Shown here one piece after another: positions 7,981-34,767 of a DNA stretch of 34,767 bases. The stretch is from Octopus bimaculoides. Its lineage: Eukaryota. How positions within the stretch are numbered: the first letter of the stretch is position 1; every line of letters begins with the position of its first letter. A program made the position numbers and the translations under genes. The stretch is from positions 183,537-218,303 of the forward strand of contig NC_068999.1 of NCBI RefSeq assembly GCF_001194135.2, in the 5' to 3' direction. Below the pieces are notes generated by a model that saw only the letters and a program-made list of their open reading frames with translations, was not told the origin of the DNA and searched no databases.

Positions 7981-8654
7981 TTGGTTGACAGGAGCTTCTA
8001 CAGATTAATTTCAGACAGCCTACCTGATATTAATGATGTTAAAAAGTGACCACATCATGACGAAAATGAATTGAGGCGAGGGATGATGGAATGATTATCT
8101 TTTCTATAAATAACAAAGATAATCTTTAATTCGTTTGACGTCATAAAATTTAAATCCAGAACTCACGATACTCTTTAGACCCAAGGAATCATATAAATGC
8201 TTAATGTTATATGCAAGAGAAGTAGAATTAGCTTAAAATAGCAAGCTATGAATCATACTTAATGTAAACACATCTCGGAAAAGCAAATTTATAGCAGTTT
8301 TGACCTGGAGATAATCTCTTATGAACGTACTGCGTTTAGAAACAGAATATATATCAGAGGCAGACGCCAACCGTCCCAACAGTGGATGGTGAAAAAGCCA
8401 GATGTGCGTTCCTGCCTCATTGGGATTTATTAGTAGCATGTATTCACGGCCAACCGTATGCTAAGTCGAAATCTCTCGTCACTGATTTAGGGAAACAGTG
8501 AAATAGAAAAGCCCTGTTGTTACAAATAATGTATAACAGCGTAAACGACCGGAGATTCCTCGGAAAATTGTACCATCAAAGTACTTCTTAGGGAACTACA
8601 GTGAGTACCAGTGTAGAACAGAAGCTGGACAATTTAATTACTGGTATTCACAAG

Positions 8655-11783: not shown

Positions 11784-11793
11784 NNNNNNNNNN

Positions 11794-12358: not shown

Positions 12359-12578
12359 TAATAATAATAATAATTTCCATTTTTGGCACAAGGCCGACAA
12401 TTTCAACGGAAGGGCAAGTCGATTACATCGATCCTAATGATCAATTGGTGCTTATTTTATCGACTCCGAGGGGATGAAAGCAAAGGCGGCCTCGGCAGCA
12501 TTTTGAACTCAGAACAGACGGACGAGATGCGACTCAACACTTTACCCGGCTCGCTAACCATTCTGACAGCTCACCGCA
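12317..12578 (-). mobile_element. Full-length tRNA-derived SINE (family A) with (ATT)n tail
   Basis: Minus-strand head gcggtgagctgtcagaatggttagcgagccggg, B-box-like gagttcaaa, body gcctttgctttcatcc..gtcgataaaataagcacca..ggccttgtgccaaaa, tail (ATT)n at 12317-12374. Similar to copies at 13065 and 34022. Confidence 0.85.
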
Positions 12579-12599
12579 TTAATGAAAACAATAAAGACA

Positions 12600-12715
12600 A
12601 ACCGTTTTGTCATAGGCACAAGTCCTTAAATTTTGGAGGAGGTGGGTGGCTGATTGCATCACCCCTAGGAGTTGACTGGTACCTATTATTTCATCGACTC
12701 CGAAAGTATGGGAAG
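12600..12715 (-). mobile_element. Partial SINE family A (3' half)
   Basis: ggcacaag..gactggtacctattatttcatcgactccgaaag parallels 12385-12480. Confidence 0.7.
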
Positions 12716-12724
12716 CAAAGTCGA

Positions 12725-13001
12725 GTGCTGCATCTCCAGACAAAAGAGGGAATCATAAAAACTAAATCCATCCCCATTAGAAGAGGAACATTCCAAGGAA
12801 ACTCGCTCTCTCCACTCCTTTTTCTGACATACTACAAACAACTGGATGTGAATACAACTGCTTTAGTAAAACAATAACCACCCCTTGTTTATCGATGATC
12901 TAAAACTGTTTGCTGCAAAGGATTAACTACTGGAAATATTAGAGACAGTGCATGGATTTACCAAAGAAATAAACAGGAATCTCAGTTTAGAAAAGTGTGC
13001 C
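12725..13001 (+). mobile_element. RT-domain fragment of R4/Dong-type non-LTR retrotransposon
   Basis: VLHLQTKEGIIKTKSIPIRRGTFQGNSLSPLLF (cf. RGIFQGDSLSPLLF). After a frameshift, NHPLFIDDLKLFAAKD*..VHGFTKEI..LSLEKCA from 12876 (cf. HLLYMDDLKLFA..FGLDKCA). Confidence 0.9.
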
Positions 13002-26294: not shown

Positions 26295-26487
26295 TTGTTT
26301 AGCCCTGAGACTACCTTTGCCGCGTAGAAATATAATCAAAGATCCTAGCAGTTTATATCAACCAGGTTTTATGGTTTATTTTTATATTTTGTATAAGTAC
26401 TGTGCCTTATCTAAAATATCATCTACTTAAGAGAGTAGCGCATCATTTGACAGTAATCTGGCTACTATTTCCAGCAAGTTGAGCTAC
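26295..26487 (+). mobile_element. Interspersed repeat family C copy
   Basis: ttgtttagccc..atcaaagatcctagc..catttgacagtaatctggctactatttccagcaagttgagc, collinear with the 17824 copy. Confidence 0.5.
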
Positions 26488-28310
26488 TTCTTAAACACAC
26501 TTTTATTTGTTCTTTGCCTTCAGACATTCCTTGAAGATAGTCGTTCTCTTGACATAAGGCAGGTCCGCTATATTTGTCTAAAGGTTTTGCGACGCAATCA
26601 TCGTTTTCCGATAAAGCCGAGCTTCTAGTTTCACACACAACTCTCAAATACCTGCAACTTCATAACGTTTTATTGTTAGCAATTAAACAATATTCATAAA
26701 GTTCATATAACTCTAGACGTAAATTTAACTGGTTGTTTAAGTTATATAATAATTTATGGTTTAACGATCGTCATGGCAATGCATGGCTTCTGTATAGTAC
26801 GCATATATATATATATATATATACACGTATGTATGTGTGTATGCATAGCTGTACATTGTACGTGTGTGTATATGTATGCCTATGTGTATGCATATATATA
26901 TATTTATATAATATATAGTCGTAAAACAGGAGAAAAACTATATAATTGAGTGCTCTCTATCGATAAGTCGAGCGAATGTTGTTAATAAATAAGTTTTATT
27001 TAATATATGGACGTTAAAACGAAATGGGTTGCTTTTAAATGACCGTATGCATATACACACACAAATGCAAACATACACACACCCTTATATACATTTGCAC
27101 GCATATACTTTCACGCACCCACATTCAGAGAAATATACGAACGCAGGCAAGCCTACATACACAAATTTTCTCGTTCAATCTTACACATATACCTCATAAA
27201 TTCAATTTATTTCCATTTTGATACTGAGGTTTTCATGAATTATATGTGTCTGTGTGTGTATGTGTGTGTCTATAACGAAACACACCGGAACACACATGAT
27301 ATATACATGTACAGACAAACACACACATTTATATAAGAATACATTTATATGCGTATGTTTGATAAACATGTTTTCAACATAGCCTAAACCTTGTAATGTT
27401 TAAAGATCGTGTCGTCAAACCACAAACCTGTGTCTCTCTGTCTAGCAAAAAGCTTCTTGCCTTGTCAATATCTGCTTATTAGGACAGTCTTCATCCATAT
27501 TTAAGAGAGGCACAATAGGTTAGAACATAGGTTTTCAGTCCACGGTTGGAGTACTATGAGCGAGTACGTATGAGAAATCGCGGGATGCGTCATGTTTGTA
27601 GAAACCGGGAATTTTAAAGTATTTCCCGTTAACTGAACGTAACTCATGTTTATCTGAAATGCATGGAGTATCTTTCTAAACAAGTGTCTTCAATAATATC
27701 TTTTATCTTTTAGTTGCTCCAGTCAGTGGACTGCGGCCGAGTTAGGACACACCCCACAAAAACAGATATGCACACACATAAACACTCACCGTCACACATA
27801 CACGCACATATATACTCTTTACAAAAATGTATGTATGCATGTCTAAGCAATCGAAAGATAATTTGTTTATACTCTAGCCGGACCAAATATATTTGGCTTT
27901 CGAATTATTATCAATCGTAAAGTTTTTAAAAAATTGCTGATTCTCCGTAGAATTCATAAAACTGCTAACGTTCATCTCATCTTAGTAATATGTGAATAAT
28001 TTAAATAAGAGAGAAAAAGAACGAACAGAAAAGCAGCCTGAATCATTATTGTTGTTGTTGTTGCTGTTATCATTATCATCGTATCATCACTGATGTAGTA
28101 ATCACATAATCCTAGAAATGATATCTAAGATTTCATACAATTTTCGTCTCTACTGCTTATCCGATGTACTACACGGAAATTAAATGTAAAGTATTTATAC
28201 AACACACTTACTATTTCCCCCCACGCAAGCACGCACACACATACACGTGTATATATGTATGTATGTATGTATACATATAAAAGAATATATATAAAGCAAT
28301 ATATATATAA

Positions 28311-28597
28311 ATATATAATTTATATAAGGGCATTAACTATATAGTAATGCCTCACGCTCAGAGGGACTAAATAAGTCAAAAACTACAAAAAAATAAGCAA
28401 CATATTTACTGAAAGCGAGGAAATGCAGCTTTCAAAATTAATCTCTTAAAAAGAGATTTTAAGAGATTAATTTTGAAAGCTGCATTTCCTCGCTTTCGGT
28501 AAATATGTTGCTTATTTTTTGGTAGATTTTGACTTATTTAGTCCCCCTGAGCGTGAGGCATTACTATATAGTTAATGCCCTTATATAAATTATATAT
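28311..28597. repeat. Long palindrome / fold-back: 141-bp arms, 5-nt spacer
   Basis: Arms 28311-28451 and 28457-28597 checked manually: 4 mismatches (28362/28546, 28382/28526, 28387/28521, 28410/28498). Spacer agaga. TA-rich flanks. Confidence 0.97.
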
Positions 28598-29114
28598 ATT
28601 TATGGAAAAAAATGATGAGTTTTTTCATTATGAGGTTTTTTCACGCTGACTACTTGATAAATTCTTATAAAGATTTTATCCTATATTATATTATATATAA
28701 ATATATACATATATGTTTACATACACACACATATATATATACACACACACACATATACATGTATATAAATATATATGTATACGTATATATATGTATATAA
28801 CTTTTACTAAAAGAAGTCCCAAGCGCATAAATAATACGGCTTATGTCATTTATGCTGTACATTGAACAAATTGACTACGACTGAGGTACGCAATAAGACA
28901 AGGTGCTTAAACATCTGTCATAAAATGCCTGTTGTTTCACTAATGTCGTTGAGTGTTGGTCGTCAGAACATTGTGAACAGAGGCATGTCAATCGATAAAC
29001 GGTCCCTGATGAGTTTATAAGCGGATATCCTGTGCTATATGCAAGCGTCCGACAATGAGCAGCAGTTGTGGGTAGGTTTGTGCGTGTTATTATATATCTG
29101 TCATTCTTTAGACC

Positions 29115-29136
29115 TATCTATCTATCTATCTATCTA

Positions 29137-29203
<67 letters not shown>
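29115..29203. repeat. (CTAT)n then (CA)n
   Basis: Direct. Confidence 0.97.
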
Positions 29204-29206
<3 letters not shown>

Positions 29207-29361
29207 AAATATTGATGGAGCCATCCGTTAGTCACGTGAGACCACGGTTCCGAATCTGGAAAGTTTTGCCTCGGTCTTAGCTGGAAAAGCAGCGTGTGTT
29301 GCGAGCAAAGAGAGTCACATGTGTGAAAGTCGACTCGAAGAGGCTGTATATACGGACATAT

Positions 29362-29501
29362 ACTCCGAGTTTCGGATGTCAGGCCGGAAACCCACGCCGG
29401 CATCTCTTCAGTTATCGGGCCATCATAGCATTTTTTTCGATGGCCCGTTAACTGAAGAGATGCCGGCGTGGGTTTCCGTCCCGACATCCGAAACTCGGAG
29501 T
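29362..29501. repeat. 63-bp inverted repeat with 14-nt spacer
   Basis: Arms 29362-29424 and 29439-29501 checked base by base: 3 mismatches. Spacer atagcatttttttc. CpG-rich. It explains the shared peptide MSGRKPTPASLQL in opposite-strand ORFs of the track. Confidence 0.97.
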
Positions 29502-29519
29502 TTTATCATGGCTATCGAA
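29436..29519 (+). ncRNA. Type I hammerhead-ribozyme-like motif (Penelope-like/retrozyme type)
   Basis: CTGAAGA core at 29452-29458. Stem II GATG 29459-62 / CATC 29485-88, plus one extra C at 29489. GAAA at 29490-93. Minimal stem III C-TCGGA-G, then NUH triplet GTT at 29500-02. Stem I: 29503-07 pairs with 29447-51 (one T-T mismatch), then an internal loop, then 29510-19 pairs with 29436-45. Confidence 0.6.
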
Positions 29520-29559
29520 TAATTGTCACATATTATATTAAGATAAATCCCACTATTCA

Positions 29560-30650
29560 CATAATATCGAGGTCTCTTTCACATCAACACTCCTGTGTGT
29601 AGCGTTGTCCCGGCTGTTGGCCCATTTGGTGTATGAGGGAGTTTGACTACTCTGCCATCGTCTGTAGCTAATGCCGGACCGTTGGTTCATCCGGTATTGT
29701 AGAGAGGAGAATCTCTAGTTCCCTTCTGAAGACATTTACACCGACATTATGTAGGCTTCTTAATTTTTGTGGCAGGACATTGAAGGACTGTAGACCTTTG
29801 AACTAATGCAGTATCTGGTCCTTAATTTCGAAGGAGCTGAAAGATATATTTGGCACAATACAACGGCGTCAAGTTTGTATAACGCTCAATGACGAAATTA
29901 GTTACTAGCCCCTGTAGAATTCTAAATATGCAGATTATTACTTATCTGTCTCATCTTCACTCCAGGTAGTAAAGCCGTAGCTTTTTCAGTATCTACCTGT
30001 AGCTAATCTGCTGCATTGCTTCAATCTTTTGAGGACTTCTTCAGCTCCGCTTTCAGTTTGGCGCTCGGTGGTGAACATAGCTGAGAGCAGTAGTCCAGGC
30101 GGCTGAGAACAAAGGTCCTCCAGAGGGTCAACATTAGTTAGGACCTTGGTATCCATCCTAACAGTTGTCTGCGCATTGCTGCCATCTTGGTAATGTGCAT
30201 ATGAAATGACGGATCATTGTACATGCTGATCTCCAAGTGTCTCGCTGCTGTGCGTCTGGGATTGCAGCACCTTCAGGTCCTGTACATGCAGGATTGTGCA
30301 CTGCTTGAAATTTTCCCGCATTAAACTGCATGTTGTTTAAGTCAACCCGCTTGTATACTGCATTCAGGTCCTGCTATATAAATTGCAACGATATCTGCAT
30401 TTTTCATTGCCTGTCATAATCTTGTATCATCGGCGTAGCTAGTGAGAGTGGCTGTATGAGTGGACATGGGCATGTTTTAAGAGGGCTATCATAAACAATA
30501 ATGAATGAGGGACAGCTTCCTGGGGGGACGCCATTCAGAAATTGAGTTACCTCACAAAGGGCACCATTGTCTGCAACTGCCTGACTTCTGTCTTTAAGGA
30601 AGCCATGCAGCTACTCTCTCAGTTTACCAGCAATGCCAAGGTCTTGCAGC
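29560..30650 (-). mobile_element. 5'-truncated, decayed APE-type LINE (CR1/L2 group), RT domain to ORF2 C-terminus
   Basis: Minus-strand translations: LQDLGIAGKLRE*LHGFLKDRSQAV..NGVPPG / SLLFMIAL / TSYADDT (YADD at 30437-30426) / QDLNAVYK..NNMQFNAGKFQA / FKGLQSFNVLPQKLRSLHNVGVNVFRRELEILLSTIPDEP. Multiple stops and frameshifts. The 3' boundary is approximate. Confidence 0.9.
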
Positions 30651-30789
30651 TATGTATGTATATATGTATATATGTATGTATGTATATGTATGTGTAAAAT
30701 AGGAAGAGATTTTTATCAAAAGATTCAGTTATTTAATTTAATGGTTCATACATAAAAAAATGCCGGGCGTTAAATTTTGAATACATTAT

Positions 30790-30975
30790 TAGTGTTATCA
30801 TCATCATTGTCATCATCGACACCACCACCGTCGCTACTGCCACAGCCGCCGCCACCACCACCACCACCATCATCAAATTCATCCTCCTCGTTATTATCAT
30901 TGTTGTTGTTATTATTATTATTATCATTATTGTTATTATCCTTATTATCATTATTATTATTATTATTATTATTAT
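30790..30975. repeat. Compound CAT/CCA/TTA trinucleotide tract
   Basis: Direct. Confidence 0.9.
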
Positions 30976-31167
30976 TCGGAACAAACAACCGTAATCTTCT
31001 TTTGGACATAAAACAAATTAAGAATATAATGGATTACACTTAATGGTATCGATTAGTTGTTAGTTTTTAAAGCAACTTAGAATGAAAAAAAATTAACAAA
31101 CATAAAAAAAAATGCAAAACAAAACAAATCAATGTGAAACTAAAGAGAATTACTTTAAAAGAAAAGA

Positions 31168-31209
<42 letters not shown>

Positions 31210-31627
31210 TTTATACAATAGAAGCAATTGAAGTATATATATTATATTCATTGGAATGGTTTAAACGGATAAAAAGAATTATAGATCTGTGAGTCTGATT
31301 ACAATTTAACGGTGGTGTCTGTTTAGATAATTAAAATAGATTTATCCAGTAACTAACATTATTAAATTATTTCTATAAAAGGATTGTTGTGTTCATATAT
31401 ATAAAAATAACAAAACTAATAAATATATGTATAAGCTATTATCTTTTGCTGCGCATGTCAAATGAATTTTCCGCTTTTTTTTCCCTTTCAATTCACTTCA
31501 CAGACATAACTATAAATTTTTCATTCATCCTTTCCTTTGTTTTCCTTCCATTCTTCTTCTTTTACTCATGTATCTTTTTGTTTGTTTATCTGTTTGTGTT
31601 TGCTGTAATTCCTATTCGCCATGTTTG

Positions 31628-32458
31628 TTATCGTATTGAGCAATCGTTCGCCTCCGTCATCCTTTTCCTAAAAGCTGACAGGGCCTTGTCTTTAACATAT
31701 TTTGATATCACTTTATTTTGTATTTTCTCATAATCTAGCGTCATTTTCGACATTTTCACCATCAGCTTGTAATTTTCGAAAATCCTTTTCGAAATTTTAT
31801 CCATCTCTCGACATAGCTGAAAATATCTGTCGACATCTGCATTCCTAATAGCAAGTCCTCGGAGAAACCCATCAAGATGATTCGGAATAGAAGAACGATA
31901 CAAAGACTTGTGTAATTTGCGGTACAGGTTTCGGAATTCGATTTTCGTTTGGTTAAACATAACATCCATTTCAGTATAGAGATTAGTTATTCGTTTTTTC
32001 AATTCGTAATAATCATATGACATGTCGGATAATCTACTCATATTAATATCATGATTAAAATCTGTGATAATCGTCAGATCACAAAGATTATCTCCCTCCT
32101 GTGTTTTCCCTCCATTTTCTACGAACGAAGTAGGGTTCGCAATCTTAACATTATTACGTTCACAATCAACCTGAAAGCTTTTCACTTCTGATTCACGCGC
32201 TAAAATTTCGTTCGATACTGTAGAAATGGAATGTTCCAAATTTTGGTTTGATAGAGGAGAGAAATATTTTTGTTTATCGCTTGAAGAATCATTCTCTTCA
32301 ATTATATCCACTAATGGTTTTTCCCAATCATTTCTGTCCACTTCTGAAGAACCTAACCTGATAAAGCCGCAAAATCTTCTTGATTTCGTGTATTCTTTCT
32401 TCAATTTTGATAAAAGACTTTTATGTTTCTTTAAATTACCATGTTTTATAATGTTCAT
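31628..32458 (-). CDS. Intact single-exon-like ORF, 276 aa from first ATG (MNIIKHGNLKK...EANDCSIR), unknown function
   Basis: Stop-free for 286 codons (32488-31631) in non-repetitive AT-rich sequence. First ATG at 32458-32456 with A at -3 (aagATGa); TAA at 31630-31628. Basic N-terminus, S/N/D/E-rich middle, helical-looking C-terminal ~125 aa. No family motif recognised. The track's TTG start at 32470 is a bacterial-code artefact. Confidence 0.75.
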   Translation of the reverse strand: MNIIKHGNLKKHKSLLSKLKKEYTKSRRFCGFIRLGSSEVDRNDWEKPLVDIIEENDSSSDKQKYFSPLSNQNLEHSISTVSNEILARESEVKSFQVDCERNNVKIANPTSFVENGGKTQEGDNLCDLTIITDFNHDINMSRLSDMSYDYYELKKRITNLYTEMDVMFNQTKIEFRNLYRKLHKSLYRSSIPNHLDGFLRGLAIRNADVDRYFQLCREMDKISKRIFENYKLMVKMSKMTLDYEKIQNKVISKYVKDKALSAFRKRMTEANDCSIR

Positions 32459-33294
32459 CTTCCAACACAATTCTTCAGATTCTTCTGTTTACCTTTTGGA
32501 TCATTCTCACCGTATTCCCACCAATTCTATTAACAAACTTTCTGGTTTTTGACGTCACAAAAGTTAGATGACAAATTTAATCAGAGATTTCAACGTAGAC
32601 ATTGATTGAGAAGAAAAGCAAAGCTGAGGTTTTTCAAAACATTTATCTTTTATTTTCCCATTGAAGAAAACAACTCCATTCAACATCGTCGAACTCTTGT
32701 TGTTGTTGTTGTTTATTCCCAGATCAAACTAACTATAAGCAGATATTGAATCATAGACTCTTCTGTCATTACAATTAGATTTTCTTTGTTTTGTCATAGT
32801 TTATCTAGGCTCACATTATCCATTCTGTTCATCTATTTCTATGATAATGCTATAAGTTTCGCTACGGGTTATAGTATACAAAATTCTGTTGGTTGCAAGC
32901 TGGTTCTTCCTGCAGTTGTTTAGTTTCAAATCAGCTCTGAGTCAGAAGAGCTATACTTAAAAGCGTTCCATCCATGATAACATCATCTATTTTTTTTTAT
33001 AAGTCATAGAATGTATAGGACAATGTTATTTAACTTTCTTCCATTTTAAAAATATTGTAGATCGAGTAATACCATGGTGGATCATACGTTATTAGAACGA
33101 CAGGTGTTGCTGTTTAACTCTAGGTCAAGCCGGAGAAAGTAGAACGACGATGAAAAGGCTTTCCAACTGGGACCACACTGTTGTTTTTGTTTCTCAGATA
33201 CAGTGTTTAGAGGATTTTATCCAACGTCATTCATTTTAGTAATACTTTAGGATATAATTTTTGGAGAGATGGCTGCTATTTCAAGCAAGATGTG

Positions 33295-33575
33295 TAACCA
33301 TCGTCACCACCACAAGCGGCAACAACGTCGTCGACGTCATCATCATTATCGTCATCATCGTAATCGTCGTCATTGGCATCGACGTTGTTATTATCAGCGT
33401 CATCATCAACGTTGTCGTCCTTATCGTCATCGTCGTCATTGTCATCGACATCATTGTCATTGCCATCGTCATCATCAATATCGTCGACGTCGTCATCATC
33501 ATCATCCTTGTTGTTGCCATCATAATTATCATCGTTATTGCTGTCATTATCATGATCATCATCATCATCATCAGT
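33295..33575. repeat. Degenerate CAT/CGT/CAA trinucleotide tract
   Basis: Direct; produces five overlapping low-complexity ORFs. Confidence 0.92.
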
Positions 33576-34021
33576 AGCAGTATGTATCATTTGCCGTCAG
33601 TAGGTTACAAAATACCATGGGCCATTTCAAGTCAGAACATAAAGAGCCAAAAGTAATGCCAATAAGCATTTTGTCCAACGTGTTAGTCACTCTGTCAGCT
33701 CGTCGCCTTCATTAGTGTACGTTATGTGTTGTGGTATACTGCAATCTTTGCTTCATATGAGCCGGCGAAAGACTGTTTTGATTTTGTGACCTATGTAACT
33801 GCCGGAGTCGTGAAGTTTACAACTTTCACATTTACGATCAAACTTTTAACGCCTGTTGACCATTGGTGTTTACTATTGATAAAAAACTTTAAATATAGAA
33901 TATTTTTGTCGTGTATAATTAATGCTAATTTATGGTTTGGTATGATGCATTTTATGCCCAGTTTTATAGTTTTAATACATTCATCTATTTTATATTTAGG
34001 TATGTATTTGATAAACAACGC

Positions 34022-34218
34022 TTTCTAATTTTGGCACAAGACCAACAGTCGTAGGAAAGGGGCCAGTCGATTACAATTGGTACGTATTTTATCGACCCCA
34101 AAAGGATGAATGACAAAGTTGACTCAGGGTGGAATTTCGACGCAAAACGTAAGGATCCGGAAGAAATGCCATATAGCATTTTGTTCGAATGGCCATCAAT
34201 TTGGCCGGCTCACTACCT
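34022..34218 (-). mobile_element. Near full-length SINE family A
   Basis: ttttggcacaagacc..gtcgattac..tacgtattttatcgaccccaaaaggatgaatgacaaagttgac..ggaatttcga..agcattttgttcg..ggctcactacc, collinear with 12380-12575. Confidence 0.8.
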
Positions 34219-34767
34219 TCTTTGATAAACATAAAATGTCTTATGTGTCGTAGGTCTATTACAATAGGTACGGGATCTAGTAGAGGTGCTTTAATGTATT
34301 CTATTCTTAGAACAGCCGCTGTTCATGCTGTTTCATTCTATTTTATCTCTGTTTTATTCGCGATGTTAAACGTGGCTACAAAATTGCAACAAGGCATAAA
34401 TGCATTCAGTATATATCAGTAATGTGATCGATATACTTGTGTGATGGTTTATGCCGGATGACGTTGAGAAATTGAAAGAAGAATAAGACAAGTCAGTAGT
34501 AAAAGGCAACGTTCAGAACAGTGCATTATCACTCCTAACAATACGACGACTTTATATCCAAGCGTAAATACTGAGATAGAAAAGAACAAATGTAACGCAA
34601 CCGTTGACACCAAAGAAACAGATATACGTATATACTTATATGAAGACGGCGAATGTTCTCACAAATGCAAGATGTCACTGGAAACAAGAATATCCTTACT
34701 CAGAAGAGTATTTAGAACCGAATATGGCTAGCAGTTGTTGGATTACAACCGGGTCCTTATATATATA

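What the first reader, a model, noticed from the sequence alone, without database searches (positions are those of the whole stretch)
31628..32458. Intact 276-aa ORF with no recognisable domain in a repeat desert
This is the only long non-repeat ORF in 35 kb: 286 stop-free codons. In sequence this AT-rich a stop is expected roughly every 14 codons (my rough estimate), so chance is very unlikely. Layout: K/R-rich N-terminus (possible NLS, KKHKSLLSKLKKEYTKSRR), S/N/D/E-rich probably disordered middle, amphipathic helical C-terminus (YELKKRITNLYTEM..FRNLYRKLHKSLY..YFQLCREMDKISKRIF). No obvious signal peptide or transmembrane segment. Candidate explanations are a lineage-specific gene or retrogene, the terminal exon of a larger gene, or an ORF from a transposon or endogenous virus.
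Basis: partly seen in the sequence, partly recalled or inferred. Interest (0 to 1): 0.7.

Follow-up and report, generated by a model that had tools for sequence, protein, structure and literature searches.

The report
Octopod-only intronless coiled-coil protein gene
The open reading frame is a real, single-exon protein-coding gene. It is kept intact under purifying selection in at least four octopod genomes but has no detectable relative anywhere else. That makes it an ordinary lineage-restricted "orphan" gene, whose one notable feature is a deeply conserved cAMP-response element just upstream.

Summary
Observation confirmed. On the minus strand there are 286 stop-free codons (32488..31631), with ATG at 32458 and TAA at 31628-31630, giving 276 aa. 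In 200 composition-matched simulations the longest run never exceeded 187 codons.

It is a genuine gene.
- Intact orthologues exist in Octopus vulgaris (97.5% aa identity, syntenic), in an unnamed octopus from SRA assemblies (96%) and in Argonauta hians (65%).
- All six internal indels are in frame. dN/dS is 0.13-0.32, and the neutrality test against Argonauta gives P = 7e-12.
- An in-frame stop lies 2-10 codons upstream of the ATG in every species, so it is not a terminal exon.
- It is single-copy with no terminal repeats. No transposon, viral or paralogous relative turned up in 1.84 billion protein representatives, Pfam, PDB, BFVD or IMG/VR. A transposon, endogenous-virus or recent-retrogene origin is therefore unsupported.

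The predicted protein has three parts: a basic N-terminal helix (net +10), an acidic disordered linker (net -12), and a basic C-terminal hairpin of two long helices (net +12, pLDDT 75). No specific fold match was found.

A 32-nt block, 30-31 of 32 nt identical in the three other octopod sequences, holds a perfect CRE (TGACGTCA, 32550-32557) 92 nt upstream of the ATG. This suggests regulation by CREB-family factors.

Expression and molecular function remain untested. The finding is of modest interest.

The parts
31628..32458 (-). Complete single-exon coding sequence: 276 codons plus TAA stop (31628-31630).
   Evidence: ORF list and sequence. Intact orthologues in 3 other octopod sequences. dN/dS 0.13-0.32, all indels in frame. 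98.2% nt identity to O. vulgaris with no indel, against ~90% in the outer flanks.
32351..32458 (-). Codons 1-36: basic N-terminal segment (net +10), predicted amphipathic helix at residues 7-34, with a bipartite-NLS-like spacing of K/R clusters.
   Evidence: AlphaFold2 helix 7-34, pLDDT ~65. Charge and heptad analysis: 62% hydrophobic at a/d positions against 15% elsewhere. Only 4 of 36 residues differ from Argonauta, pN/pS 0.15. The nuclear-localisation role is inferred only.
32048..32350 (-). Codons 37-137: acidic, S/T/N/Q-rich, probably disordered linker (net -12). It carries short conserved islands (LVDIIE followed by an acidic/Ser run, QKYFSP, QNL.HSIS, TSF).
   Evidence: pLDDT below 50 through 34-143. 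Composition. Five of the six internal in-frame indels against Argonauta and the highest pN/pS (0.57) fall here. Conserved islands are listed. The match to the SUMO-interaction-motif pattern is a regular-expression hit only.
31631..32047 (-). Codons 138-276: basic C-terminal helical domain (net +12), predicted as an antiparallel hairpin of two long helices (about residues 141-187 and 206-273).
   Evidence: AlphaFold2 on the domain alone: pLDDT 74.6, helices 4-50 and 69-136 of the fragment. 78% identical to Argonauta, pN/pS 0.22. Foldseek finds only generic long alpha-hairpins, with no hit at E <= 0.001.
32545..32576 (-). Proximal upstream block conserved across octopod genera. It contains a perfect palindromic cAMP-response element, TGACGTCA, at 32550-32557, 92 nt upstream of the ATG.
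   Evidence: Four-species alignment: the window differs from each other sequence at only 1-2 of the 32 positions, while sequence further upstream does not align with Argonauta. There are only 2 such octamers in the window. The identity step against O. vulgaris, from ~91% to 98%, falls at ~32600. Its function as a promoter element is inferred.
32593..32601 (-). Second small upstream block (TGTCTACGT), invariant in all four species. It marks the distal edge of cross-genus conservation.
   Evidence: Function unknown.
32525..32533 (-). A/T-rich TATA-like element (TTAATAGAA), 17 nt downstream of the CRE. Argonauta has a different A/T-rich string at the corresponding place.
   Evidence: Weak: it is not a consensus TATA box and the transcription start is not mapped.
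32475..32504 (-). Possible upstream ORF of 9 codons (MIQKVNRRI*), starting 46 nt before the main ATG and out of frame with it.
   Evidence: An upstream ATG and a 9-codon length are present in all four species. Whether it lies inside the transcript is unknown.
31207..31627 (-). Probable 3' untranslated region: sequence downstream of the stop that is better conserved against O. vulgaris than the outer flanks, ending at a (TA)n array (31167-31206).
   Evidence: 96-99% identity per 100-nt bin for 31200-31599, against ~90% further out. There is no canonical AATAAA on this strand in the interval. The extent is inferred, not mapped.

Best explanation
This is a taxonomically restricted ('orphan'), intronless, single-copy protein-coding gene of octopods.

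Shown:
- The reading frame is maintained by purifying selection across a divergence deep enough to nearly saturate synonymous sites (Octopus against Argonauta).
- The gene sits alone in a repeat-rich, gene-poor interval that is collinear between two Octopus species.
- Its product has no detectable homologue outside octopods.

Predicted: a non-enzymatic, all-helical protein with a basic-acidic-basic charge layout. It has an N-terminal basic amphipathic helix, an acidic disordered linker carrying short conserved motifs, and a C-terminal basic hairpin of two long helices.

Inferred, mechanism proposed at low confidence:
- The protein acts as a binding or scaffolding module. The two basic helical parts would contact a polyanionic or coiled-coil partner (nucleic acid or chromatin, cytoskeleton, or another helical protein). 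The acidic Ser-rich linker, with an LVDIIE-plus-acidic/Ser motif that fits the SUMO-interaction pattern, would be the regulated or partner-recruiting part.
- Transcription is driven from a compact proximal promoter whose key element is the conserved full-site CRE. That would place the gene under CREB/CREM/ATF-family control, either signal-induced or germ-cell-specific.

The confidence of 0.8 applies to the gene's status as a selected, octopod-restricted, single-exon coding gene. I would put CRE-driven regulation at about 0.5 and the specific molecular role at about 0.2.
For: ORF statistics: 286 stop-free codons, against a maximum of 187 in 200 simulations.

Orthologues: O. vulgaris CAI9736787.1 (276 aa), an unnamed octopus in five SRA assemblies (276 aa) and Argonauta hians GAB1605434.1 (286 aa).

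Selection:
- dN/dS is 0.13-0.32 in all pairs.
- The binomial test against neutrality gives P = 7e-12 (window against Argonauta) and 3e-7 (O. vulgaris against the SRA species).
- All six internal indels are multiples of three.
- Only the sense frame is open in all four species.

Orthology: the O. vulgaris locus is collinear with window 34399..25451. Identity is 98% in the CDS, 97.5% in the 118 nt upstream, ~96.5% downstream to ~31000, and ~90% outside.

Gene model: there are in-frame stops just upstream of the ATG and a purine at -3 in all species. No other gene is called within 10 kb in O. vulgaris or Argonauta.

No relatives:
- An exhaustive HMMER profile search of 1.84e9 representatives returns only its own cluster.
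- The PDB sequence search finds nothing meaningful.
- Pfam hits are all below threshold.
- IMG/VR and JGI metagenome scans find nothing.

Structure. Charge and heptad analysis.

Promoter: the CRE sits inside a block that the other three octopod sequences match at 30-31 of 32 positions. Proximal full CRE sites close to a TATA box are the signature of efficiently induced CREB targets in mammals (PMC5740062). CREM and CREB also occupy such sites in male germ cells (PMC3091680).
Against: - No expression evidence could be obtained here. The five SRA-derived contigs are collinear with the genome for 560 nt upstream of the CRE and may be genomic DNA rather than RNA.
- The window's own protein is absent from the 15-billion-protein collection. 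The gene was therefore apparently not called in the source assembly's annotation, which could reflect low expression.
- The transcription start is unmapped, the TATA-like element is weak, and the CRE could serve another bZIP factor or another function.
- The functional proposal rests on composition, a medium-confidence model built from only 3-4 sequences, and pattern matches. Such motif patterns occur often by chance.
- 'No homologue' is limited to predicted proteins. Unannotated copies in squid, cuttlefish, vampire squid or nautilus genomes could not be searched.
Confidence: 0.8

Rival explanations
1. It is a highly diverged member of an existing helical-domain family, for example a protein with an occludin/ELL-type coiled-coil domain. 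Its sequence would have drifted beyond detection, so it is not a truly new gene.
For: Pfam Occludin_ELL (PF07303) gives a weak hit to residues 207-266 in all three orthologues scanned, best E 0.0014. The C-terminal domain is a long helical hairpin, the general shape of many coiled-coil interaction domains. Divergence beyond recognition is a common origin of orphans (PMC12904771).
Against: The score is 18.5 bits against a gathering cut-off of 31.2. Three unrelated helical families (a Mu Gam-like domain, an oxidoreductase C-terminal domain and COG5_N) score equally on overlapping residues, which is typical of coiled-coil composition noise. Profile searches of PDB at E <= 10 recover no occludin or ELL chain. 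None appears in the top 50 Foldseek hits. There is no ELL N-terminal domain and no MARVEL membrane domain.
Confidence: 0.2
2. It is an old processed retrogene: an intronless, reverse-transcribed copy of a multi-exon parent gene.
For: The coding sequence is intronless, and the gene sits alone among retroelement debris and microsatellites.
Against: No paralogue or parent is detectable in the O. vulgaris or A. hians proteomes or anywhere else. No poly(A) tract or flanking direct repeats remain. The copy carries its own conserved promoter block immediately upstream. A processed copy would not bring such a block with it, although one could evolve later.
Confidence: 0.07
3. It is a domesticated or resident ORF of a transposon or endogenous virus.
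For: The window is rich in repeat debris, including a fragment shared with the Argonauta locus. Degenerate trinucleotide-type arrays flank the gene on both sides in the same orientation.
Against: There is one copy in each locus and each annotated proteome, and only two 90% clusters in 5.8e9. The position is syntenic in O. vulgaris. There are no terminal inverted or long terminal repeats. There is no similarity to any transposase, reverse transcriptase, integrase, capsid or other viral protein by sequence or fold. The flanking arrays are low-complexity and evolve fast (70-78% identity against O. vulgaris).
Confidence: 0.04
4. It is the last coding exon of a larger, unannotated multi-exon gene.
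For: In the window the frame stays open for 10 codons upstream of the ATG. Cephalopod genes can have very long introns.
Against: In O. vulgaris and the SRA species a stop lies 2 codons upstream of the ATG, and in Argonauta 7 codons upstream. The sequence just upstream is purine-rich, with no polypyrimidine tract and acceptor. The Met and a -3 purine are conserved. Two independent annotations model a single exon.
Confidence: 0.03

Closest known systems
Taxonomically restricted (orphan) genes of coleoid cephalopods
   Same: It is restricted, as far as can be searched, to one clade. It has no Pfam domain and is short, mostly helical or disordered, and annotated only as 'hypothetical predicted protein' in O. 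vulgaris and A. hians.
   Different: Unlike many orphan calls, it has strong evidence of constraint: dN/dS ~0.2 across genera, and a promoter block conserved to within 1-2 nt of 32. It is therefore neither a young nor a doubtful ORF.
Proximal CRE/TATA promoters of CREB/CREM target genes (mammalian c-fos, Nr4a1 and Nr4a2; spermatid CREM targets)
   Same: There is a full palindromic TGACGTCA within ~100 nt of the coding start, conserved between species, followed by an A/T-rich element. The transcription unit is compact and intronless (PMC5740062, PMC3091680).
   Different: The start site, factor occupancy and inducibility are all unknown here. The TATA-like element is not a consensus box. The comparison is to vertebrate promoters.
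Occludin/ELL homology domain (Pfam PF07303)
   Same: It is a roughly 100-140-residue helical coiled-coil domain at the C-terminus of the protein, with a weak Pfam alignment in all orthologues.
   Different: The hit is below the Pfam threshold. There is no support from PDB sequence or fold searches, and no accompanying ELL or MARVEL domain.
Long alpha-helical hairpin proteins (Vipp1/PspA/ESCRT-III core, YscO, PI3K p85 inter-SH2 coiled coil, sperm microtubule inner proteins)
   Same: The predicted C-terminal domain superposes on these hairpins with a query TM-score up to 0.67.
   Different: E-values are 0.1-1 and identity 9-21%. The resemblance is the generic two-helix hairpin shape, not evidence of homology or shared function.

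Membership tests
Protein-coding gene under selection (as opposed to a chance or decaying ORF) | The frame is intact in independent lineages, and indels are multiples of three. | tested here: met
   Four octopod sequences are intact. All six internal indels against Argonauta are in frame. Only the sense frame is open in all four.
Protein-coding gene under selection (as opposed to a chance or decaying ORF) | dN/dS is significantly below 1. | tested here: met
   Values are 0.13-0.32. The binomial P is 7e-12 against Argonauta.
Protein-coding gene under selection (as opposed to a chance or decaying ORF) | Transcription and translation are demonstrated. | not testable with these tools
   No expression data are available. 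The origin of the SRA contigs, DNA or RNA, is unknown.
Taxonomically restricted (orphan) gene | No homologue outside the clade in sensitive searches. | tested here: met
   Only its own cluster is found among 1.84e9 representatives, and 2 clusters among 5.8e9. This is limited to predicted proteins; unannotated genomes were not searchable.
Occludin/ELL homology domain (PF07303) | A match to the family model at or above Pfam's gathering score. | tested here: not met
   The score is 18.5 bits against a cut-off of 31.2. Unrelated helical families give equally weak hits on overlapping residues.
Occludin/ELL homology domain (PF07303) | Sequence or fold similarity to solved occludin or ELL2 domains. 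| tested here: not met
   No such chain appears in PDB profile searches at E <= 10 or in the top 50 Foldseek hits.
Processed retrogene | An intronless coding sequence. | tested here: met
   The CDS is a single exon in the window and in two annotated genomes.
Processed retrogene | An identifiable intron-containing parent or paralogue. | tested here: not met
   No paralogue appears in any search.
Processed retrogene | A poly(A) remnant and target-site duplications. | tested here: inconclusive
   None were seen, but they would have decayed in an insertion older than the Octopus-Argonauta split.
Transposon or endogenous viral ORF | Many dispersed copies. | tested here: not met
   There is one copy per locus and per annotated proteome, in a syntenic position. 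A genome-wide nucleotide copy count was not possible.
Transposon or endogenous viral ORF | Terminal repeats, or similarity to mobile-element or viral proteins. | tested here: not met
   No inverted or long terminal repeats. No Pfam, IMG/VR or BFVD similarity.
CREB/CREM-type CRE promoter | A full-site CRE close to the gene start and conserved between species. | tested here: met
   TGACGTCA at 32550-32557 lies 92 nt from the ATG, within a block that the other three octopod sequences match at 30-31 of 32 positions.
CREB/CREM-type CRE promoter | A TATA box shortly downstream, and a mapped start site within a few hundred nt. | tested here: inconclusive
   Only an A/T-rich TTAATAGAA is present at 32525-32533, and it is not conserved in sequence in Argonauta. 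The start site is unmapped.
CREB/CREM-type CRE promoter | Factor occupancy and signal-dependent expression. | not testable with these tools
   This needs occupancy and expression data.

The most novel reading that the evidence does not exclude
An octopod-specific, compact, intronless gene whose transcription is switched on through a deeply conserved CRE. It would be the lineage's own activity- or signal-induced (immediate-early-like) gene, or alternatively a spermatid CREM-type gene. It would encode a new helical adaptor that binds SUMO-modified or polyanionic nuclear partners, making it a clade-restricted component of cAMP/CREB-dependent plasticity in the octopus nervous system.
Probability: 0.08. 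Interest if true: 0.6.

Novelty: new member of a known kind. Interest (0 to 1): 0.3.

Why it matters
Cephalopod genomes hold many clade-restricted genes whose reality and roles are mostly unknown. This one is a clean, well-bounded example with unusually good comparative support: an intact frame, dN/dS of about 0.2, and a footprinted promoter element.

It appears to be missing from the annotation of the genome the window comes from, so it is a small annotation gain. The conserved CRE gives a concrete regulatory hypothesis that can be checked against existing octopus expression atlases.

It does not reveal a new mechanism or system. Without expression data it remains one uncharacterised orphan gene among many.

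Tried and rejected
1. Pfam on the ORF and on all orthologues gave only sub-threshold helical-family hits: Occludin_ELL, a Mu Gam-like domain, an oxidoreductase C-terminal domain and COG5_N. I rejected them as coiled-coil noise.
2. PDB sequence searches with full-length and C-domain profiles gave only chance-level hits, to TrwK and to NADH dehydrogenase subunit 9.
3. Foldseek of the full-length model (pLDDT 50) and the C-domain model (pLDDT 75) against PDB, and of the full-length model against BFVD, gave nothing at E <= 0.001.
4. IMG/VR and JGI metagenome scans found no relatives.
5. Rfam on 30500-33800 gave only sub-threshold hits inside microsatellites. The bacterial promoter/terminator scan does not apply to this eukaryotic sequence.
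6. I tested whether the N-terminal codons carry extra synonymous-site constraint. Identical codons make up 25 of 31 there against about 70% elsewhere, which is not distinctive, so I dropped the idea.
7. Literature searches for the SRA run numbers and the protein accessions found no papers. The two argonaut genome papers give no usable divergence date in their text.
8. I could not establish whether the SRA contigs are RNA or DNA.

Full report
**1. The observation**

The ORF is real and lies at the stated coordinates, on the minus strand. The ATG is at 32458 and the stop TAA at 31628-31630, giving 276 codons. An upstream TTG at 32470 would give 280 codons. The stop-free stretch is 286 codons, 32488..31631.

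From base composition a stop is expected every 13.4-14.1 codons, or every 11.5 with local composition. The expected number of stretches this long in six frames of the window is about 1e-6 to 3e-8. In 200 first-order Markov simulations the longest stop-free run averaged 126 codons and never exceeded 187.

Every other ORF of 110 aa or more falls into one of three groups: microsatellite or low-complexity translation, an ORF run through assembly gaps, or a short ORF (up to 164 aa) with no Pfam match. TRF covers 8.2% of the window but only 35 nt of 31000-32600.

**2. It is a conserved gene**

A search of 5.8 billion protein clusters found two relatives.
- One is a 276-aa protein, 96% identical, assembled from five SRA runs. 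Its 90% cluster also holds Octopus vulgaris CAI9736787.1, annotated 'hypothetical predicted protein'.
- The other is Argonauta hians GAB1605434.1, 286 aa and 65% identical.

The O. vulgaris locus is collinear with the window over about 9 kb (window 34399..25451), so the two are orthologous loci.

Against O. vulgaris, nucleotide identity varies by region:

| Region | Identity |
|---|---|
| CDS | 98.2%, no indel |
| 118 nt upstream of the ATG | 97.5% |
| ~600 nt downstream of the stop | ~96.5% |
| Outer flanks | ~90% |

The upstream step falls sharply at about 32600.

Against Argonauta only the gene aligns (window 32576..31660, 74% nt), apart from two repeat fragments elsewhere.

dN/dS is 0.13-0.32 in all six pairs. 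A binomial test of non-synonymous against synonymous differences rejects neutrality, with P = 7e-12 for window against Argonauta and P = 3e-7 for O. vulgaris against the SRA species.

Constraint is uneven along the protein. pN/pS is 0.15 for residues 1-36, 0.57 for the linker and 0.22 for the C-terminal domain. All six internal indels against Argonauta are whole codons. Only the sense frame stays open in all four species.

**3. Gene model**

In-frame stops sit upstream of the ATG in every species: 2 codons in O. vulgaris and the SRA species, 7 in Argonauta, and 10 in the window. A purine at -3 is conserved. The sequence before the ATG is purine-rich, with no acceptor-like tract.

Both annotated genomes model a single exon, and no other gene is called within 10 kb on either side. 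This excludes the 'terminal exon' reading for practical purposes.

The window's own protein sequence is not in the 15-billion-protein collection. The gene therefore appears to be unannotated in the assembly the window comes from.

**4. Not mobile, not viral, no parent**

- tBLASTN of the protein against all fetched loci and the window finds one copy each.
- No terminal inverted or long terminal repeats flank the gene. The only flanking repeats are degenerate trinucleotide-type arrays at 30770-31010 and 33260-33660, which evolve fast.
- An exhaustive HMMER profile search of 1.84 billion representatives returned only the gene's own cluster. No paralogue that could be a retrogene parent is detectable.
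- IMG/VR and JGI metagenome scans, and Foldseek against predicted viral structures, found nothing.

**5. The protein**

AlphaFold2 with the three-sequence alignment gives pLDDT 50 overall. It predicts a helix at residues 7-34, low confidence (pLDDT below 50, taken as disorder) at 34-143, and long helices at 138-187 and 206-273.

The C-terminal 139 residues alone give pLDDT 74.6, as an antiparallel hairpin of two long helices.

The charge layout is +10, -12 and +12 for residues 1-36, 37-137 and 138-276. The N-terminal helix and the first C-terminal helix show heptad-like hydrophobic stripes.

Foldseek against PDB gives only generic long hairpins at E of 0.1 or more: Vipp1/PspA, YscO, the p85 inter-SH2 coiled coil, the LSD1 tower and sperm microtubule inner proteins.

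The one lead from Pfam was the occludin/ELL homology domain, hit in all three orthologues scanned. I do not accept it, for these reasons:
- It stays at 18.5 bits against a cut-off of 31.2.
- Three unrelated helical families give equally weak hits on overlapping residues.
- Neither PDB sequence searches nor fold searches support it.

Within the variable linker, short islands are conserved from Octopus to Argonauta: LVDIIE followed by an acidic/Ser run, QKYFSP, QNL.HSIS and TSF. The first fits the pattern of a SUMO-interaction motif with flanking casein-kinase-type serines. The N-terminus fits a loose bipartite nuclear-localisation pattern. Both are pattern matches interpreted from general knowledge, not tests.

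**6. The upstream region**

The most informative non-coding feature is a 32-nt block at 32545-32576. Each of the other three octopod sequences matches the window at 30-31 of its 32 positions, and it contains the perfect palindromic cAMP-response element TGACGTCA (32550-32557), 92 nt upstream of the ATG. Only two such octamers occur in the window.

Upstream of a second small invariant block (TGTCTACGT, 32593-32601), Argonauta no longer aligns. Given near-saturated synonymous divergence (dS 0.75-1.0), this is a phylogenetic footprint.

An A/T-rich TTAATAGAA lies 17 nt downstream of the CRE. Argonauta has a different A/T-rich string there.

In mammals, conserved proximal full CREs close to TATA boxes mark the efficiently induced CREB/CRTC targets (PMC5740062). 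CREM and CREB occupy such sites in male germ cells (PMC3091680). I therefore infer, but have not shown, that the gene is under CREB-family control.

**7. Most likely account**

Firmly supported: this is an octopod-restricted, intronless, single-copy gene encoding a helical, non-enzymatic protein under purifying selection.

The following remain hypotheses:
- that the protein acts as a binding or scaffold protein through its two basic helical parts;
- that its acidic linker is the regulated part;
- that transcription is CRE-driven.

Expression is the main gap. The five SRA contigs share one 5' end, differ at their 3' ends by 48 nt, and are collinear with the genome for 560 nt upstream of the CRE. 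They may be genomic DNA.

**8. Novelty and score**

The gene is already present as an unnamed 'hypothetical predicted protein' in two annotated genomes, and I found no literature on it. Orphan genes are common in cephalopods, so a specialist would not be surprised.

The added value here is a demonstration of constraint, a refined gene model, a candidate regulatory element, and an apparent annotation gap in the source genome. Interest is 0.3. The kind is known, and this is a new, uncharacterised member.

Noticed in passing
window 32475-32504 (- strand): A 9-codon upstream ORF (MIQKVNRRI*) starts 46 nt before the main ATG, out of frame with it. An upstream ATG and the 9-codon length are conserved in O. 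vulgaris, the SRA species and Argonauta (MIQIKNRRN*, 49 nt upstream). Whether it lies in the mRNA depends on the unmapped start site.
   Followed up: partly
window 30770-31010 and 33260-33660: Degenerate trinucleotide-type arrays (ATC/ATT/GTC-rich on the + strand, reading as poly-Asp/Asn on the - strand) flank the gene on both sides in the same orientation, about 2.4 kb apart. They are only 70-78% identical to O. vulgaris, so they look like fast-evolving low-complexity DNA rather than exons or terminal repeats.
   Followed up: partly
window 32565-32570 (- strand): Inside the conserved promoter block the window reads CATCTA. O. vulgaris, the SRA species and Argonauta all read CATCTG, an E-box-like hexamer. 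This is a change specific to the window's species in an otherwise invariant element.
   Followed up: no
window 20478-20878; L001 20370-20740: A 400-nt stretch matches the Argonauta locus at 66% identity, in a different relative position and orientation. It is a dispersed repeat shared between genera. The overlapping 132-aa ORF (20499-20897) has no Pfam match.
   Followed up: partly
window 12383-12877 (+): This 164-aa ORF is the second-longest ORF that is not low-complexity. It has no Pfam hit at E <= 0.01. By eye its C-terminal part resembles retroelement debris, but I did not verify this.
   Followed up: partly
window 11784-11793, 16690-16773, 18106-18176, 22113-22541, 25320-25329: Five runs of N (10-429 nt) are assembly gaps. 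At least three of them (11784-11793, 18106-18176, 22113-22541) sit inside TA/CA-type dinucleotide arrays. These three create the long 'X-filled' ORFs in the ORF list, and the 22113-22541 gap explains the GC dip to 0.11 at 22-23 kb.
   Followed up: yes
window 8136-8143: This is the second and only other exact TGACGTCA in the window. Its context and conservation were not examined.
   Followed up: no
window 31628-32458 (protein): The exact 276-aa product is absent from the 15-billion-protein collection, although the O. vulgaris and A. hians orthologues are present. The gene seems not to be annotated in the assembly the window comes from.
   Followed up: partly
L002-L006 (SRA runs SRR11869384, -85, -90, -91, -94): Five independent assemblies give near-identical 1.7-kb contigs (0-1 differences). 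They share the same 5' end, and their 3' ends are spread over 48 nt just before or inside a (TA)n array. The first ~85-92 nt match neither the window nor O. vulgaris. The species and library type are unknown.
   Followed up: partly
window 30644-30707: A sub-threshold Rfam mir-297 hit (30.9 bits against a gathering score of 90) falls on a (TATG)n microsatellite. It is an artefact of repeat composition.
   Followed up: yes
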